Positions 5,590 through 23,119 are shown, counted from the first letter of the stretch. The stretch: DNA of 64,000 nucleotides from Sphaerodactylus townsendi (GCF_021028975.2 NC_059439.1:39680001-39744000); one strand, 5' to 3'. A program made the numbers and translations. The notes: generated by a model not told the origin, from the letters alone.

Positions 5590-6339
5590 TTAATGGCTCT
5601 TTGGCTCTCCGGGGCACAGAGGGAGCCTGCAGGCCTCACCCATGCATTCCTGAGGTCCGGGATGCCCTGGGCCCTCCCGCAATACCCGGAATGGTGCCCC
5701 GTGCCCAGGCACGATGATGTCAGCAATGCGCAGCGCATATGCCCTGCTGGCCTCTTGCCGCACTGGGTCTTGGCTCAGTGGCTGCCATTGCCCTTCATCA
5801 CTCTCGCACTCAAAAAGGTCTCCGGCCACCAAGACGTGGCCCATGCTGGTGCCCCACACCATCAGACTGACATCGTGCCCTGCGTGGCCAGGAGTGGGCA
5901 GCACTTCCAAGTGCCCGGCGTGCAGCGGGTGGGGAAGGCCCTGGCGCAGTCCGTTGGGGAGGTAGAGGCCATCGGGCCGGCTGAGGTCGGTGCCCACGAT
6001 CAGATCCGCCCCTGGGAAGAGATTGAGGTTGCCCACGTGGTCCGAGTGGCCGTGGGTGCACACCACGTGCCGGATGTCCCCGGGGGACACTCCCTGCCCC
6101 GCCAGCCCCGCCAGCAGGCGCTCTCGGCCCCACGGGCCCCCCGTGTCCACCAGGGTCAGCTGCGGCCCCAAAACCAGAGAGACGGTCCCGTCCGCTCGAG
6201 TGCTGCCGTCCGGGAGCTCTGTGGCGTAGCCCTCCTGCAAGACCACCACGGAGTAGGGGGAGCCGGCCACGAGCGACACAGGGAGGGGGGACGTCCGCAC
6301 CTTGACGCCGGGGTCTGCGGGGGCCAGCTGGAGCGCCAT
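5590..6339 (-). CDS. MBLAC1: Metallo-beta-lactamase domain-containing protein 1, single coding exon, 249 aa
   Basis: First ATG at 6339 within ORF 5590-6534. Motifs [26 protein letters not shown] (HxHxDH), TPGH, VAGDLFE and IVPGHG match MBLAC1 as I recall it. Confidence 0.95.
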
Positions 6340-6902: not shown

Positions 6903-13434
<6,532 letters not shown>

Positions 13435-13623: not shown

Positions 13624-13645
13624 AATAAATTCCCGTGTAAATAAA
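13624..13645 (+). terminator. Tandem poly(A) signals of TAF6
   Basis: AATAAA at 13624-13629 and 13640-13645 (duplicated gtgtaaataaa), followed by GU-rich tctttggtttgg. Confidence 0.8.
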
Positions 13646-14043
13646 CAGTCTTTGGTTTGGATCGATCAGCCTGGTGTGGTTTGTTCCTGGCTCCCAAGAC
13701 GGGTGGGAAACCCTTCCTGCCTCCCCCACCCCTTAGTTGGGTGAAGGGGGGGCAGGGAAAGGGGCTCTGTCGTGGGGGGGGGTCACCTGAGAAGGAACAG
13801 ATCTTAAAGGCAGGATCTCCTGGCAGAGGCCGTGAGTGGGAGGGCCAGCAAAGAGACGGGGGGGGGGGTCTCTGCCCTCCCTGCCACCCCCAATTCTGCA
13901 GGCGGAGTGAACTTTGGAACATTTACTTTTTTTCTGGAGAGGAGGAGGAGACGACGGCTTCACCTGGAAGGATAAGGGGGCGGCGGTTGGGGGGTGTCCA
14001 GGTGAGTGTCTGCGGGGGAAGTGTTGTCGCCCTCTCCTGAGTG

Positions 14044-15167
14044 CTACCGCTGCCAGGCCGGTCTGTCCTTGGTAGCATGGCCAGGGGCCGCCCGGCGGGC
14101 GTCGTAGATTACCTGGCCCAGTGGCGGCCACCGCAGCCCGGAGCAGCAGATCAGGAGGCGGGCAGGCCGTGGTGGCGGCGGCGGGGGAGGGCTGGGGGCG
14201 GCGGCCAGAGACAGCCAGGCGCTGGAGTGCTCGGAGCTGCGGGGCGCTGGCCGTGGCAAGGGCTTCCGTGGGCGGGCGGCACTGCGGGCGTTCTGTGGGG
14301 GTCTCTCTGCTGAGGGAGGGAGGAGGAAGAGGTAAGAGAGTCTGAGCTGAGGAAGACATGGGTGGGCTCCTCCTGGTTCGCCTGGCTGCTTCATATGGGC
14401 CAGACTCTGGTGTGGGGAGCCCCCAGTGCCCCCGACTCACCCTGGGGTGCGTGGCAGTGGGGAGCTCTTCTGCGTGATCCCTGCGGAGGCCGGCGGAGCT
14501 GCAGGAGGAGAGCAGGGTCGGGTTGGTGGCCGTGGCATAGAGAGACGTGGGGCCCAAGGGAAGAGGGGTCCAGAAGATTGTTCCGTTCCTCTCTCCGAGG
14601 GCCCAGGCTCCCCCTCCCCCCCACAGTGGTGTGTCCTCAGAACAACTCTGCGACATAGAGCAAGCNNNNNNNNNNNNNNNNNNNNNNNNNNNNNNNNNNN
14701 NNNNNNNNNNNNNNNNNNNNNNNNNNNNNNNNNNNNNNNNNNNNNNNNNNNNNNNNNNNNNNNNNNNNNNNNNNNNNNNNNNNNNNNNNNNNNNNNNNNN
14801 NNNNNNNNNNNNNNNNNNNNNNNNNNNNNNNNNNNNNNNNNNNNNNNNNNNNNNNNNNNNNNNNNNNNNNNNNNNNNNNNNNNNNNNNNNNNNNNNNNNN
14901 NNNNNNNNNNNNNNNNNNNNNNATCACGGCGAGAGGGCTGGAGAAGCAGCTGTGGAGCCAGGCGTGGTTGGCAGCGCCCAACAGGCCAAATCTAACCCCA
15001 GTGGCTCCAGGCAGGGTAAGGAAGGGCAGCAGGCCTTTCAGGGGGGGATCTCCCCACACTCTCACCTGAGAGATCAGGTTGGCGGCCACACATAGCAGGA
15101 CCATCCCGGCCAGGATCCGGAGTGCCCAGTCCCCCGCCTCTTGGCAGGTGCCCTCCTGCACTGGCAT
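14044..15167 (-). CDS. Candidate 3-exon single-pass protein, SPEM1-family-like, 141 aa
   Basis: Exon 15167-15066 (gcagccATG; MPVQEGTCQEAGDWALRILAGMVLLCVAANLISQ, donor CAG|GTGAGA). Exon 14498-14441 (acceptor ctctcctcctgcag, donor G|GTGAGT). Exon 14309-14044 (acceptor ctccctccctcag; ...PLGQVIYDARRAA...QR*). Phases 0 and 1 join into an open 426-nt frame. The N gap lies in intron 1. Confidence 0.65.
14666..14922. other. Assembly gap (257 N)
   Basis: Run of N. Confidence 1.
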
Positions 15168-15457
15168 GGCTGCCCAGACGCCCGCGGGTGGCAGCCCAAG
15201 AGAGGAGGCAACAGGGAAGCCATTGTGAGGGGGCCGTGAGGTCACAAAGGAAGCCAGCGTGGTGCTGGGGGTGGTCTTGGGATCTCCAGCTCTTTAAGGG
15301 ACCACCACACACCAGCAGCAGGGGGGCCTTGGGAGCGGGGGCCCCTCGCCAGGGCAAGACAAGGCAGGTCCCTGGGTCCTTCTGGGTTCTGGAGGTGCAC
15401 CAGCCTGGCACAGGAGGCCCACGTGTGCTTCAGATGGCATCGGACTGGAGGTGGTGG

Positions 15458-17928: not shown

Positions 17929-20669
17929 AGCCCACAAAATAGAAAACAGTGTGCCAAGCACAATGCAATAGAACCGAACAACTCAAAAATTCAAAATTGG
18001 CACACTGACCTGGATTTGTATGTAGACATCATTTACAAAAAATTCAAAGCAACATTTGCTCAAAGTTATTTTTCATTATTATTACACACATATAAATCCT
18101 CTTACACTAATGTTAACCTTATTCTAATATACTATAATAAGAAAATTAAAGTGCATAATATATATAAAGTGCCAGTGTCAATAAATCATATCAAAATACA
18201 ATTTCATCATTTCGTGCAAGATATAATGACAAGGTCCATATGTGACTCTAAACTAATGAGTTCCCCAAAAAAATTTTCTTAGTATGTCCATATTTTTGTA
18301 TGGTTTCAGAATGGAACTACACAATTATTCATCAGCTGTATTAGCAAACAGTCATGCACAAGTCCATATGAGACCACACTGTTCAATTCCAACAGAAATT
18401 TTATATCTCCATTGTTTTGTATGTTCCAAATTGAACTTCACAACAGAGCTGATATCTCCTGTGCCTTTGGGAGTCCATTCATAGATGGTACATGGAAAAA
18501 AATGAGAGAATCTTTGCATAATCAAGCTTTCACTCGATCTGAATGCGTTTTCGAAGGTATCTTCCTCAAGTATACCGATTCTCAATAGCTTGATTTCATC
18601 CTGAGATTTTACTACAATGCAAGGTTGTTGTTATTCCATACCTATGTTCGTGATTAATAATCAAATTTAACCCAAACTGTTAAACATACTTTACAACATT
18701 CTTCTACAGTGTCATCTTTTCCTAGAGATCATCTTATACAAGCAGGAAAAAAGCTCAGATATATACATCACCCATTAATCATCTGCACCTGTTCCCATAT
18801 AGGTCTAGAGCAAAAGTTAAAGGGATCCCTCTTTCATTCATAAAAAAAAAGGTCCAGTCAATTTCCCTATTAAGACCTGTATGGTCTGATTGTAACGTGT
18901 ATATCCACTTTGCCTCTTTCTGCAAAAAGTTAATCCGGCCTGATGTCCCTTATTTGTTGAAGGAATATGATAAAAGGGTACCAAGAAGGAAAAATCCTTC
19001 TCTGTGTGTTGTTTCTACTCCCCTTAAAGTGGCTAACCATAGAGAGCCTTCTTCTTTATTTAATCTGATGTTACTGAGCTTGTTCTAAGAGTCTGGTCCG
19101 GAGATTTCTCAATGTCATTCCCAGACGTACATGAGATTACAACTGCATGTTATCAAATAAACACATTGGTTAGTGTTACAGTTGGAAAAAAATATCTCGA
19201 TGGGGCCATGTTCTTCCAGTGTTAGGATCTGTAATATTTTTAGTATTAAGTGATCTGTCACACATGGAACAATGGCCACATTTAAAGTGGCCACGTAAGA
19301 TAGGTGTTATTTGATAAGGTTTTCTTATGTCCGATCTTATCAATGTCTGGCGTAGATTGCCCGTGTGTCTATATCCAATTATTGGTGGCAGTCTGCATCC
19401 AGGTATGTCTGCCACAATAAGCCAATATTTATTTATGATGGATCTGATCTGGCTAGCCTGTGTTGTGTAATCTAATGCCCATGTGATTCGTTTATTATCC
19501 ATCCTGGGCTTATATTGTAATAAGCCCTCTCTGGGTACCTGTCTTATTCTGTCCAAAGATCTATTTATTACATTTTTGGGGTATCCTTTTTCAGAGAACT
19601 GGTTGACTATTCTCTCAGCCTCTTTTTTAAAATGGTAGGGGTCTGTGGAATTTCTTTTAGCTCTAACCAATTGGCTATATGGAAGATTATATGCAACTTA
19701 TATATAGACTGTTGTACGCTATTTAGTTTATTGAAATTTACTATGTATTGTTAGAAATAGTTTTTATGGTTATCGCTGTTTTTAAATGTTTATTTTATAT
19801 TGTTTCCCCTATGTTGTACACCGCCCAGAGCCCCCCGGGGATGGGGCGGTATAAAAGTTCAAGAAATAAATAAATAAATAAATAAATTATCCCGCAAATG
19901 CTTAGGATGGTGGGAAGAATAGCGTAGCACTGTGTTTCTCTCTGTATTTTTATGAAAAGGGGCAAAACATATTTGATTGTTTTGCCCAAAGTAGATGGTG
20001 GTGTCCAAGTAATCTATACTATGAGTGTTACTAGTACCTGTGAATTTAATGGACCCGTGTATCTCATTAAACCATTCAAGGAATAGCTGTAGATCAAATT
20101 GCGGCGTCATAATCAAAAGAAGGTCATCAATGTACCTGCAATAATGAAGGATATTGGAATGAAAGGGATTAGAATTCTGATTCATGATGTAATTCTCTTC
20201 AAACTCCTCCATGTCCTACTGGAAATTGGCAGCACTTGGTGCCAGGGGGGACCCCATACTGAGCCCCATTTTTTGGATATAGAAAGTGTCCTCAAATCTA
20301 AAGTAATTGTTCTCCAAAATAATTTCAATGATGTTAATTAAGAAATGAGTTGGGGGGAATAATTCAGTTCTATTCTCCAATATTCTGAGGAGAGTAGATC
20401 TCATCTCCTCATGTGGTATGTTTGTGTAAAGTGAAGTGATATCTAAGGTCACTAATAGTGCATCTTTTTGAAAAAAATTTCCTTCAAGTTTATTAATTAG
20501 ATGTGTTGTGTCCTTAATGTAGGATTTCATCTTTTTTACGAAGGGTTGAAGGAAGCTATCTATATATATTGCTAGTGGCTCCAATATAGAATTGGTGGTC
20601 GAAACAATGGGTCTGCCAGGAGGTGGTCTTTCCGGTTTATGGATTTTTGGCACTACTTGAGTGCTGCTA
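17929..20669 (-). mobile_element. 5'-truncated Penelope-like element (RT plus GIY-YIG endonuclease), frameshifted
   Basis: RT peptides PKIHKP..PGRPIVS, TLDITSLYTNIP, GLSMGSPLAP, RYIDDL, IKFT, YLDT, SHHP, PYSQLVR; then a CGHCSMC linker and GIY-YIG remnants VYLITCSCNLMYV (~19160-19125) and WIYTLQS..GLNRE (~18905-18860). 12-bp TSD CTTTGCTTTGAA at 17917-17928 and 20670-20681. Confidence 0.9.
19691..19885 (+). mobile_element. L2-type 3' tail inserted into the Penelope ORF
   Basis: Ends gtacaccgcccagagccccccggggatggggcggtat plus (AAAT)n. Flanked by an ATTAT duplication; removing it restores RDNLPYSQLVR. Confidence 0.75.
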
Positions 20670-23119
20670 CTTTGCTTTGAAGCAACCGTGAAACTCTTCC
20701 AATGGGTGAATCACGACCCTAGGAGGGTTTACTCAAAAGCAAGCCCCATTGCCAGCAACCAAGCTTACTCCCAGGTAAAGGATCGTGCTTTAGTTCTTCG
20801 CATGAAAATTAGTGGAGTTTAACAGTGCTTAACAGGGTTACCTACACTGCTTCCCCAAAACTAGGTCTTAGGTTTAATGCTAATAATAGAGCCCAGCAGC
20901 CCAGACCAGCCTAGATGTGGGGGGGAGGGCAACTCTGTTTGCGTGTGCCCACAGAGAGGGCTCTGAGTGCCACCCCTGGCACCCGAGCCATAGGTTCGCC
21001 ACCACTGCTCTGTGAGAACACCGAGACTAATCATGCTGGCCAAGTGGTTCAAATAATGACCTCAAGACTGTGATCCAAGGAGGTGGCTTGTGGGGGGATG
21101 GGGGGCTGACCTTGGCGGCTGGGAGGGGGATTGCACAGAGCAGGCACTCAGAATTCCTTGGGGAGACAATATGCTTTCTGCCCTCTTAGTTGACTCTGAT
21201 CACATAACAGGTCCTCTTGGTTAGCAGGTAGGTGCAAGGGAAATTGTGTCTTGCTGTTGGATTATGGGAAACATGGACTTGTGCTGGGAGCCCCCATATT
21301 TCAGTACCCGCACTAACTGTGTTCCTAAAAGGGTGGGTTGTCACTCCAGACGGGTTTGGAGACGGGTGGGTCAGTAGCTTTTAGATGCAGCTCCAAAGTT
21401 TCAATTAAGAGAAATAAAGGGGTGGGGGGGTTGGCCCAAATTTCCCAGCAGCTGTGCTGTCTGTGCACTGTGATCACTAGGTGTGTGCATACAGGTGTGG
21501 GCAGCCTGACCCTCTTACCTGAGGCCCTGTGCTTTAAAGGAGAAACTGGTGGCAGTGGGTTGCAGCAATCTGAATTCTTGGTTGAGCTTTTTCGTGCGGC
21601 ACATTCCACAGCTGGTTCAAATCAGCAGGGCAGGTTTGGCCACTCCCCTGGATGCGACCCTAGTGGGTGAGCACTTATCCTGCACAGGCACTCAGGCCTC
21701 CTGGGCTCACCGCTGCCGCCCTCGACTGAAGCCTTTGGGCGGGCAGTCGGTTCTCGGCGAACAGCTTGGCAGGAACTGGGTAAGCCCTTTCTGGCCCCAC
21801 TGGCATGGGGTAGGGGTACAGGATGTTCTCAGACATGGCCCCCGAGAGCCCTTTCTGCCAGAGAGAAGCAAAGCCACACAGCCCGCAGCAGGGCAGAGGG
21901 CAGCCTGCAACCCCCAGGGAGCGTCGCTAGACCGAGAGTGCTTGGCTTGCATCCTGGGAAGGAGGGCAAACGCAGGGCACTGGATCCCAGGGCCATGTAG
22001 TCTGTGGAGCAAAAGTAAAACCTTCCCAAATCTTGTTCCAATGTCAGGGTTTGTGTTTGCAGAAAGTGAAGCTGTCATCTAAGGAGATCTAGAGCAGCCG
22101 GCCTCCACTCCTGCCTGGGGAGGGTGGGGGGTCTGCAGGCAATGCTGCGAGGGGGGAGATGTTGTGGAAGAGGGGAGAAGCCCCACAGAGGGTGGTTCTG
22201 AAGCAGGCATCTCCCTGCCGCTCTTCCTCTCCCCACAGATCTCAAGTCAGCAAGTGAGGGGGCCAGGCATGGGGGTCACAATGCAGGATGACAGGGGATT
22301 CTGGGAAGTCCTGTGTGTGCCTCTGCACGCTCACACGGGGGCAAACGCGAGGCATCTTTCTTGGCTCTGGGGCCGTTTTGGGTTGTCCCAGCATTGGCTG
22401 GTTCTCAGTGGCTGACAGTCAACGCCTCACAAAGACCATCTCCCCCACCCACAGATTTCCAGGTCTAGGAAGGCCTGGAAAGCCGATTTATTCACGGGGG
22501 CAACCGCTTTGGCACACATGGTTGTGTCTTTAACCGTCTAGTTTAAAGCGTGAGTTTAAAGTTTTTATTCTACTGTTGGCTGCTGTCTTTGCAGTAGCCG
22601 CTCCTTCCGTCAAAGGCAGGAGAATGCCGACTGGGTAGCACAAATCACGTTCCACAGTGCAGAAGCAAAGGAAAATGGTTTGGTGGTCGCCCAGTTGGAC
22701 CCTGACTGGATCTTCTGTCACCCACAAAGGGGACTTTGCAAGGGAGTTTGGGGGAGCTACATGTCCTTCAATCAATAGGTAAGGGGCAGAGCCCAAGTCT
22801 GGTGGGATTCTTCTTTTCAAACGTAGAATTCAGTTCTTTACAAGCCTGTCTCTGCTCTGCTGAAGTTTCTCACTTGATGAGCCAACCGTGGGACACCGAG
22901 TCCTCCCCAGTTTGGTCTGGGGCAGGGCAGACAGAATCTCTCCCCATGGGCCCCCCACGCTAGCACTTGACACCTTGCAGGTTCTTTGGAGAACTCCAGC
23001 TTTAAAAGGACTCTGTGGTGGCGATTCAGCCCAGTTGCTGCGTGACCTGGAGATGATCCGTTCAGGCGCTGCCCCTCTGTGTGCAATGGGGATGGGGGGG
23101 AAATAGGGTGTTTTGCCAG

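What the first reader, a model, noticed from the sequence alone, without database searches (positions are those of the whole stretch)
14044..15167. Hidden 3-exon gene resembling spermatid SPEM1, tail-to-tail with TAF6
Seen: a Kozak ATG, three exons with strong splice signals and matching phases (0, 1), an N-terminal hydrophobic helix, an Arg/Pro-rich middle and a C-terminal GQVIYDARR, with AGTAAA ~120 nt past the stop. The ORF track does not show it as a unit, and an N gap splits it. From memory: human SPEM1 has SCQDLGNSVLLLLGLIICINISINIVTL (here TCQEAGDWALRILAGMVLLCVAANLISQ), a short second exon and GRIVYDARD. SPEM1 is needed for spermatid cytoplasm removal and is generally described from mammals. 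Inference: a compact non-mammalian SPEM-family gene, implying an amniote origin with two conserved functional motifs.
Basis: partly seen in the sequence, partly recalled or inferred. Interest (0 to 1): 0.85.

Follow-up and report, generated by a model that had tools for sequence, protein, structure and literature searches.

The report
Conserved small gecko membrane-protein gene
The three-exon gene beside TAF6 is real and conserved between two distantly related geckos, but every test available here failed to link it to the mammalian sperm protein SPEM1, so it is best seen as an uncharacterised lizard gene for a small membrane-anchored protein.

Summary
On the minus strand there is an ATG at 15167 and three exons (15167-15066, 14498-14441, 14309-14044) with consensus splice sites and phases 0 and 1. 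They give a 141-codon reading frame. AGTAAA lies 117 nt past the stop, and TAF6 ends tail-to-tail at 13434. The N gap (14666-14922) lies wholly inside intron 1, so it does not affect the frame.

The gene is real. An HMMER scan of 1.84 billion proteins with the exon 3 peptide found only Paroedura picta LOC143825838 (XP_077170308.1, 'uncharacterized protein'). That gecko gene has the same exon lengths (102 and 58 nt), the same phases and the same neighbours (MBLAC1, TAF6, PILR-like, DGAT2-like). Only the exons align between the two loci. dN/dS is about 0.46, and the motif PLGQVIYDARR is invariant. The window itself comes from another gecko lineage.

The SPEM1 link is not supported. Pfam Spem1 gave no hit for any exon or for the full gecko protein. 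No SPEM protein appeared in the HMMER scan. The gene sits in the TAF6 block, not the SPEM block. No RNA runs were available, so expression is untested. Conservation is shown only within geckos, so an amniote origin is not shown.

The likely product is a single-pass membrane protein with a basic, proline-rich cytoplasmic tail that carries short docking motifs.

The parts
15066..15167 (-). Exon 1 coding part: ATG at 15167, 34 codons, ends in phase 0 at donor CAG|GTGAGA
   Evidence: It aligns to gecko L001:10026-10127, which has the same 102-nt length and the same GTGAGA donor. The blastn block 15169-15059 brackets it exactly.
15069..15125 (-). Predicted transmembrane helix (residues 15-33)
   Evidence: Kyte-Doolittle 19-residue mean is 2.04 in the window and 1.72 in the gecko. 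The core GMVLLC is invariant between the two species.
14499..15065 (-). Intron 1 (GT...AG); it contains the assembly gap, so its true length is unknown
   Evidence: It does not align to gecko intron 1, with 48-50% identity in a forced alignment. Indels seen in relatives X4 and X5 fall here.
14666..14922 (.). Assembly gap (N), inside intron 1; not filled and not read
   Evidence: No contig of runs X1, X2, X4 or X5 bridges it. The gecko model has no exon between exons 1 and 2.
14441..14498 (-). Exon 2: 58 nt, basic juxtamembrane stretch LRRPPQGSRRRAPHCHAPQ, ends in phase 1 at donor AGG|GTGAGT
   Evidence: Gecko exon 2 (L001:10478-10535) is also 58 nt, with 74% amino-acid and 84.5% nucleotide identity.
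14310..14440 (-). Intron 2 (131 nt; 120 nt in the gecko)
   Evidence: Relative X4 has five small indels here and none in the exons.
14044..14309 (-). Exon 3 coding part with stop TAG at 14046-14044. It encodes an Arg/Pro-rich tail with the motifs PRSSEHSSAWL, a run of seven prolines, and a CC pair.
   Evidence: It shows 61% amino-acid identity to gecko exon 3. The length difference of 33 nt is in frame, and the stop codons align.
14092..14124 (-). Invariant C-terminal motif PLGQVIYDARR
   Evidence: All 11 residues are identical between the window and Paroedura picta, although dS is about 0.6.
13922..13927 (-). Candidate poly(A) signal AGTAAA, 117 nt after the stop
   Evidence: The gecko also has AGTAAA as the only listed hexamer downstream of its stop, at 385 nt. 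This is weak evidence.
12964..13434 (+). Context: last coding stretch of TAF6, stop at 13434; AATAAA at 13624 and 13640
   Evidence: TAF6_C Pfam fragments on the + strand. The end of the gecko TAF6 gene call aligns to 13434.

Best explanation
This is a genuine three-exon protein-coding gene of geckos, the orthologue of Paroedura picta LOC143825838 ('uncharacterized protein'). It is left unmarked here because each exon is short and GC-rich DNA gives open frames on all sides.

The 141-residue product has four parts:
- a 13-residue acidic N-terminus;
- one strongly hydrophobic helix;
- a very basic juxtamembrane stretch;
- a proline/arginine-rich tail, probably disordered.

By the positive-inside rule the N-terminus faces out (or into the lumen) and the tail is cytoplasmic. 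The tail carries four conserved short elements:
- LRRPPxGSxRRAP;
- PRSS[ED]HSSAWL;
- a run of 7-8 prolines followed by RPAR[LI]L[IV]C;
- the invariant PLGQVIYDARR.

The most likely mode of action is a membrane-anchored adaptor that docks cytoplasmic partners through these short motifs. The juxtaposed cysteines could be palmitoylated.

Shown: gene structure, conservation, purifying selection, the hydrophobic helix. Inferred: topology, disorder, adaptor function, and any tissue of expression. Its family is unassigned; kinship with SPEM proteins is not demonstrated.
For: - Homologue search: phmmer of the exon 3 peptide against 1.84e9 representatives gave only two hits, E about 3e-10. Both are isoforms of P. 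picta LOC143825838.
- Synteny: in the gecko locus the gene lies between a V-set (PILR-like) gene and the 3' end of TAF6, with MBLAC1 and a DAGAT gene beyond. The window has the same order.
- Gene structure: exon lengths of 102 and 58 nt, phases 0 and 1, donors GTGAGA and GTGAGT, and the start and stop positions are all shared.
- Amino-acid identity: 56%, 74% and 61% for exons 1-3.
- Exons versus surroundings: exon nucleotide identity is 72-85%, against 48-57% for introns and flanks.
- Selection: Nei-Gojobori dN/dS is 0.39, 0.46 and 0.48 per exon, 0.46 overall, with dS about 0.6. The model frame has the lowest ratio of the three same-strand frames in exons 1 and 3, ties one other frame in exon 2 (0.46 against 0.47), and has no stops.
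- Codon positions: differences are 27%, 19% and 34% at positions 1, 2 and 3 (p = 0.017).
- Close relatives: in X4 and X5 all listed indels fall outside the three exons, and no listed change makes a stop or hits a splice dinucleotide.
- Divergence: the window is from a gecko that is not close to Paroedura. MBLAC1 identity is 85% to Euleptes and 77% to Paroedura.
Against: - No RNA evidence could be obtained for this species. Whether RNA supports the gecko model is not visible here.
- No orthologue is annotated in the other geckos or lizards in the protein collections.
- GC-rich DNA keeps several frames open; frame +1 of exon 3 also has no stop.
- dN/dS from two sequences is noisy, and antisense frames sharing third positions also score low.
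- The Kozak context is weak in the gecko (cccATGc), and upstream out-of-frame ATGs exist in both species.
- The adaptor mechanism is inference from composition and motif conservation only.
Confidence: 0.8

Rival explanations
1. The gene is a highly diverged, shortened member of the SPEM family (SPEM1/2/3). It would be expressed in spermatids and act in cytoplasm removal or head-tail integrity.
For: - It shares the general architecture of the family: a compact three-exon gene with an N-terminal single transmembrane helix. SPEM2 has 3 exons over about 2 kb (PMC10904452), and SPEM3 has a transmembrane helix at residues 26-48 (PMC13711846).
- The part of the protein said to resemble SPEM1 'GRIVYDARD' is exactly the most conserved element, PLGQVIYDARR, invariant between the two geckos.
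- SPEM proteins evolve fast and have no recognised domains, so profile searches could miss a distant relative.
Against: - Pfam Spem1 gave no match at E<=10 for exon pieces, motif-only pieces or the full gecko protein.
- No SPEM protein appeared in the full HMMER scan with exon 3.
- The Atlas feature search gave nothing.
- The N-terminal 'CQ.xG' match is not conserved in P. picta.
- The locus is the TAF6/MBLAC1/PILR block, while SPEM genes lie at human 17p13.1 (PMC10904452 for SPEM2).
- The authors of PMC10904452 found no SPEM2 orthologue in chicken or zebrafish.
- By my rough estimate, a G-x-[IV][IV]-YDAR match is expected a few times by chance across a proteome. This is inference.
Confidence: 0.2
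2. There is no protein. The conserved blocks are exons of a non-coding RNA or regulatory elements at the 3' side of TAF6. The open frame is a by-product of GC-rich sequence that a gene predictor picked up in one gecko.
For: - No RNA or protein evidence was available.
- Other frames are also open in exon 3.
- Only one genome annotation carries the model.
- The product has low complexity and gives no domain hit.
Against: - The start codon, both splice junctions with their phases, and the stop codon are at homologous positions in two gecko lineages.
- The net length difference in exon 3 is in frame, at 33 nt.
- dN/dS is 0.46, with the model frame lowest among same-strand frames in exons 1 and 3 and tied in exon 2. 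The codon-position pattern is 2<1<3.
- An 11-residue motif is invariant at the amino-acid level.
Confidence: 0.1
3. The exons belong to a neighbouring gene. They could be alternative terminal exons of a minus-strand gene further upstream, or an antisense transcript of the TAF6 3' UTR, rather than a separate gene.
For: The transcription start is not known. The region from 15.2 to 23.3 kb contains no other identified gene.
Against: - In the gecko the model stands alone with its own ATG.
- The adjacent V-set gene is on the opposite strand, so the two are head-to-head.
- The interval upstream in the window holds a reverse-transcriptase fragment, not exons.
- The TAF6 poly(A) signals (13624, 13640) lie about 280 nt short of the candidate's AGTAAA, so the transcripts need not overlap.
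Confidence: 0.03

Closest known systems
Paroedura picta LOC143825838, isoform X1 (XP_077170308.1, 153 aa, 'uncharacterized protein')
   Same: - Same synteny (MBLAC1, TAF6, this gene, V-set/PILR-like, DAGAT).
- Same three exons of 102 nt, 58 nt and a long third exon.
- Same phases, donors, and start and stop positions.
- 56-74% amino-acid identity per exon.
- Same transmembrane helix and the same four tail motifs.
   Different: - Gecko exon 3 is 11 codons longer and has a CCC cluster and a VRREAVGTR insert.
- The window has CC instead.
- The gecko's exon-2-skipping isoform X2 uses an upstream ATG whose frame is closed by a stop in the window (ORF 15074-15223).
Mammalian SPEM family (SPEM1, SPEM2, SPEM3; Pfam Spem1)
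   Same: - Compact three-exon genes.
- N-terminal single transmembrane helix.
- Largely domain-less, fast-evolving remainder (PMC10904452, PMC13711846).
- A remembered, unverified [IV][IV]YDAR motif near the C-terminus of SPEM1.
   Different: - No detectable profile or pairwise similarity.
- Half the length of SPEM1 or less.
- A different chromosomal neighbourhood.
- Expression unknown.
- The SPEM family has so far been reported from mammals only.
Proline-rich single-pass membrane adaptors in general (for example PRR7-type proteins; named from my own knowledge, as a functional analogy only)
   Same: - Short N-terminal ectodomain without a signal peptide.
- One transmembrane helix.
- Cysteines in the cytoplasmic tail; in PRR7-type proteins they adjoin the membrane.
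- A proline-rich disordered cytoplasmic tail with short docking motifs.
   Different: No sequence similarity was found to any such protein. The analogy is architectural and untested.

Membership tests
SPEM family (Pfam Spem1) | Significant match to the Pfam Spem1 profile | tested here: not met
   hmmscan at E<=10 gave no Spem1 row for any of these: exon 1, exon 3, the extended ORF, two motif-only pieces, the gecko exons, or the full-length gecko proteins P0002 and P0001. HMMER filters drop matches weaker than about E 0.1-0.3, so a very faint resemblance cannot be excluded.
SPEM family (Pfam Spem1) | Pairwise similarity to a SPEM1/2/3 protein | tested here: not met
   phmmer of the 87-residue exon 3 peptide against 1.84e9 representatives gave only the two gecko LOC isoforms at E<=0.001. 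The exon 1 and exon 2 peptides were not searched in that library. The joined product was not searched, by instruction.
SPEM family (Pfam Spem1) | N-terminal single transmembrane helix | tested here: met
   Kyte-Doolittle mean of 2.04 over residues 15-33. SPEM3 has a transmembrane helix at residues 26-48 (PMC13711846). This feature is not specific to the family.
SPEM family (Pfam Spem1) | Compact three-exon gene | tested here: met
   SPEM2 has 3 exons over about 2 kb (PMC10904452). I could not compare exon phases with those of SPEM genes.
SPEM family (Pfam Spem1) | Conserved synteny with the SPEM cluster (human 17p13.1) | tested here: not met
   The neighbours here and in the gecko are MBLAC1, TAF6, a PILR-like V-set gene and a DGAT2-like gene. 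In human these belong to 7q22.1, by my own knowledge. SPEM2 is at 17p13.1 (PMC10904452).
SPEM family (Pfam Spem1) | Shared C-terminal [IV][IV]YDAR motif with SPEM1 | not tested
   The SPEM1 wording is from memory only.
SPEM family (Pfam Spem1) | Testis or spermatid-restricted expression | not testable with these tools
   No RNA run holds the stretch. All five holders are genomic contigs.
Orthologues of gecko LOC143825838 | Significant sequence similarity over all exons | tested here: met
   E about 3e-10 against the whole library for exon 3. Each exon peptide finds its counterpart in L001. Identities are 56%, 74% and 61%.
Orthologues of gecko LOC143825838 | Same exon-intron structure and phases | tested here: met
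   Exons of 102 nt and 58 nt plus a terminal exon, phases 0 and 1, the same donor hexamers, and aligned stops.
Orthologues of gecko LOC143825838 | Same genomic neighbourhood, tail-to-tail with TAF6 | tested here: met

The most novel reading that the evidence does not exclude
The gecko gene is a relic or sister of the SPEM family. That family would then have arisen before mammals, as a short membrane-anchored protein whose functional core is the N-terminal anchor plus the [IV][IV]YDAR peptide. That peptide would become a testable candidate for the partner-binding site of SPEM1.
Probability: 0.2. Interest if true: 0.55.

Novelty: new member of a known kind. Interest (0 to 1): 0.3.

Why it matters
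The result adds a real, selectively constrained small gene to a gecko genome. Among the protein collections searched, only one other gecko annotation carries it. It shows how short GC-rich exons escape ORF-based views.

The product has a clear, testable layout: a membrane anchor plus four conserved short motifs, one of them invariant over a synonymous divergence (dS) of about 0.6. Paroedura picta is a laboratory gecko, so a knock-out is feasible.

If the SPEM link were later confirmed, it would move the origin of a mammalian male-fertility gene family outside mammals and point to the motif that matters. As the evidence stands, that link is only a lead.

Tried and rejected
- Pfam, exon by exon and on motif-only pieces and on the full gecko proteins: no Spem1. 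Only sub-threshold noise appeared (Mito_fiss_reg E 1.1-1.4; HGWP E 0.032).
- The search for homologous proteins with exon 3 and with P0002: nothing beyond the gecko's own isoforms.
- ESM Atlas with exon 3 and with P0002: best scores 0.82-0.84 to unrelated bacterial clusters, which is meaningless.
- PDB sequence search with P0002: only E>0.6 proline-rich noise.
- RNA evidence: the look-up of sequencing runs found no RNA holder. Read laying showed genomic contigs only, with no joints, so the splice junctions could not be tested.
- Close-relative dN/dS (X4, X5): 7 nonsynonymous and 6 synonymous changes, too few to decide.
- Paralogues: none in the window or the gecko locus.
- AP4M1, the human tail-to-tail neighbour of TAF6 (from my knowledge), was looked for in 15.4-23 kb. 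It was not found; only a reverse-transcriptase fragment was there.
- The bacterial promoter scan is irrelevant to a vertebrate and is disregarded.
- The Spem1 founding paper (PMC1871874) is not held. A literature search for SPEM1 in reptiles was uninformative.
- Our-findings searches for SPEM and TAF6 returned nothing.
In one search a coordinate map across the three exons was used only to number codons, and nothing joined was printed or sent to a search.
- The gap was not filled, and the overhanging letters shown by read laying were not used.

Full report
**1. Observation**

Reading the minus strand and translating each exon by reference confirms the model.
- The ATG is at 15167, with G at -3.
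- Exon 1 is 15167-15066: 34 codons, donor CAG|GTGAGA.
- Exon 2 is 14498-14441: 58 nt, with a pyrimidine-rich acceptor and donor AGG|GTGAGT.
- Exon 3 is 14309-14044, with a long pyrimidine tract before its CAG acceptor and a TAG stop.
- The exons sum to 426 nt, which is 141 codons plus the stop. Phases are 0 and 1.
- AGTAAA lies at 13927-13922, 117 nt after the stop.
- Residues 15-33 form a strongly hydrophobic segment, with a Kyte-Doolittle mean of 2.04.
- TAF6 is on the + strand. TAF6_C fragments appear in ascending profile order. It stops at 13434 and has AATAAA at 13624 and 13640. The two genes are tail-to-tail, with about 250 nt between their likely 3' ends.

**2. The gap**

The N run (14666-14922) lies wholly within intron 1. 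The frame is therefore carried by the exon 1 to exon 2 junction (phase 0 to phase 0) and does not depend on the gap.

Contigs of four public runs stop at both edges, and none bridges the gap. Continuity is thus not shown directly. The gecko locus has exon 1 and exons 2-3 colinear, on the same strand, with no exon between them. This supports the order and orientation of the two sides.

**3. Is it a gene?**

*Homologue.* A full HMMER scan of 1.84 billion representative proteins with the 87-residue exon 3 peptide returned exactly two proteins, at E about 3e-10. They are isoforms X1 and X2 of 'uncharacterized protein LOC143825838' of the gecko Paroedura picta, XP_077170308.1 and XP_077170309.1.

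*Synteny.* The gecko locus (L001) carries, in order: a DAGAT gene, a V-set gene, LOC143825838, TAF6 (tail-to-tail) and a Lactamase_B gene (MBLAC1). The window has the same order.

*Gene structure.* Mapping X1 onto L001 gives exons at 10026-10127, 10478-10535 and 10656-10957. Their lengths are 102 nt, 58 nt and a terminal exon, with phases 0 and 1 and donors GTGAGA and GTGAGT, as in the window. The stop codons align, and the exon 3 length difference of 33 nt is in frame.

*Identity.* Amino-acid identity is 56% for exon 1, 74% for exon 2 and 61% for exon 3.

*Footprint.* A blastn of the 21-kb gecko locus against the window aligns only exon-like blocks. Between the TAF6 stop and the PILR-like gene these are exon 1 (15169-15059, bracketing it to within 2 and 7 nt), exons 2-3 (14512-14043) and one 31-nt block. 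Exon nucleotide identity is 72-85%, against 48-57% for forced alignments of introns and flanks.

*Selection.*
- Nei-Gojobori estimates, computed exon by exon, give dN/dS of 0.39, 0.46 and 0.48. The total is 0.46, with dS about 0.6.
- On a frame-agnostic nucleotide alignment the model frame has no stops. Its ratio is the lowest of the three same-strand frames in exons 1 and 3, and level with one other frame in exon 2 (0.46 against 0.47).
- Differences by codon position are 27%, 19% and 34%, the coding pattern (p = 0.017).

*Close relatives.* In organisms B and C (runs X4 and X5), every listed indel falls in the introns or the 3' UTR. No listed change creates a stop or touches a splice dinucleotide. 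The counts, 7 nonsynonymous and 6 synonymous, are too small to decide on their own. Some variants were not shown by the tool.

*Isoform X2.* This gecko isoform skips exon 2 and starts at an upstream out-of-frame ATG. The same frame in the window is closed by a stop (ORF 15074-15223). X1 is therefore the conserved product.

**4. Which animal, and how deep is the conservation?**

The neighbouring MBLAC1 protein is most similar to gecko proteins: Euleptes europaea 85%, Heteronotia binoei 81%, Eublepharis macularius 79% and P. picta 77%. Non-gecko lizards follow at 71-76%. The window is therefore from a gecko that is not close to Paroedura, and the comparison spans a deep split within Gekkota.

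No orthologue is annotated in any other species in either protein collection. With these tools I could not search unannotated vertebrate genomes. Conservation is shown for geckos only.

**5. SPEM kinship**

*Tests that failed.*
- Pfam hmmscan at E<=10 gave no Spem1 row for exon 1, exon 3, the extended ORF, two short pieces centred on the YDAR motif, the gecko exons, or the full-length gecko proteins.
- The library-wide phmmer scan with exon 3 found no SPEM protein.
- Atlas and PDB searches gave nothing.
- The locus belongs to the TAF6 block, whereas SPEM2 is reported at human 17p13.1. The same paper states that no orthologues were found in chicken or zebrafish (PMC10904452).

*What remains.*
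- The shared architecture: three compact exons and an N-terminal helix (PMC10904452; PMC13711846 for the SPEM3 helix).
- The remembered 'GRIVYDARD' of SPEM1 would fall on the single most conserved element here, PLGQVIYDARR, which is 11 of 11 identical between the geckos.

I could not obtain a SPEM sequence from any tool, so this motif comparison is untested. By a rough estimate of my own, a match of that kind is expected a few times by chance across a proteome. I put SPEM kinship at about 0.2.

The full-length test used the database protein P0002 instead.

**6. Mechanism (inference)**

The N-terminal flank is acidic (MPVQEGTCQEAGD). The C-terminal flank of the helix is very basic (LRRPPQGSRRRAPH...). 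The positive-inside rule therefore predicts N-terminus out and tail in the cytoplasm.

The tail is rich in Pro, Arg, Ser and Ala and has no domain match. It has four islands conserved between the geckos:
- LRRPPxGSxRRAP;
- PRSS[ED]HSSAWL;
- a run of 7-8 prolines followed by RPAR[LI]L[IV]C;
- PLGQVIYDARR.

This is the layout of a membrane-anchored adaptor that binds partners through short linear motifs. The polyproline run could bind SH3, WW, EVH1 or profilin-type domains. The serine cluster could be a phosphorylation site, and the cysteines could be palmitoylated. None of this is shown here.

**7. Verdict**

'Hidden gene' is supported. 'SPEM-family' and 'amniote origin' are not supported.

The gene is a new member (orthologue) of an already predicted but uncharacterised gecko gene. 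Interest is modest, at 0.3.

Noticed in passing
window 5590-6327 (-): MBLAC1 (Lactamase_B) lies head-to-head with TAF6 with under 600 nt between them, as in Paroedura picta. There is no room for CNPY4, which sits there in human (from my knowledge). Its best named hits identify the window as a gecko: Euleptes 85%, Heteronotia 81%.
   Followed up: partly
window 18000-20700: An AT-rich stretch (GC 0.35 at 18-20 kb) with a reverse-transcriptase fragment at 20219-20653 (-), RVT_1 E 2.5e-5. A retroelement insertion lies between the small gene and the PILR-like gene.
   Followed up: no
window ~38.8k, 43.9k, 51.0k, 61.4k: Two short gecko blocks (L001 4814-4995, near the V-set gene, and L001 13407-13515, inside TAF6) each hit the window four times at 75-83% identity. 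This could be a dispersed repeat or repeated PILR-like gene copies.
   Followed up: no
L001 10001-10957; window 15074-15223 (-): Gecko isoform X2 skips the 58-nt exon 2 and uses an upstream out-of-frame ATG. The equivalent frame in the window ends in a stop before the exon 1 donor, so X2 is not conserved. The window has its own upstream ATG at 15223 in a strong context (acaATGg), which would act as an overlapping upstream ORF if it is transcribed.
   Followed up: partly
window 14154-14205: The stretch coding for the proline run (GGCGGCGG-type) attracts many short, unrelated contigs from all four runs. It is a common low-complexity GC repeat, and depth there is meaningless.
   Followed up: no
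window 13734-13764; L001 11470-11500: A 31-nt block, 90% identical between the two geckos, lies in the interval between the two converging genes. It is downstream of the poly(A) hexamers of both, so it may be a shared 3'-end or termination element.
   Followed up: no
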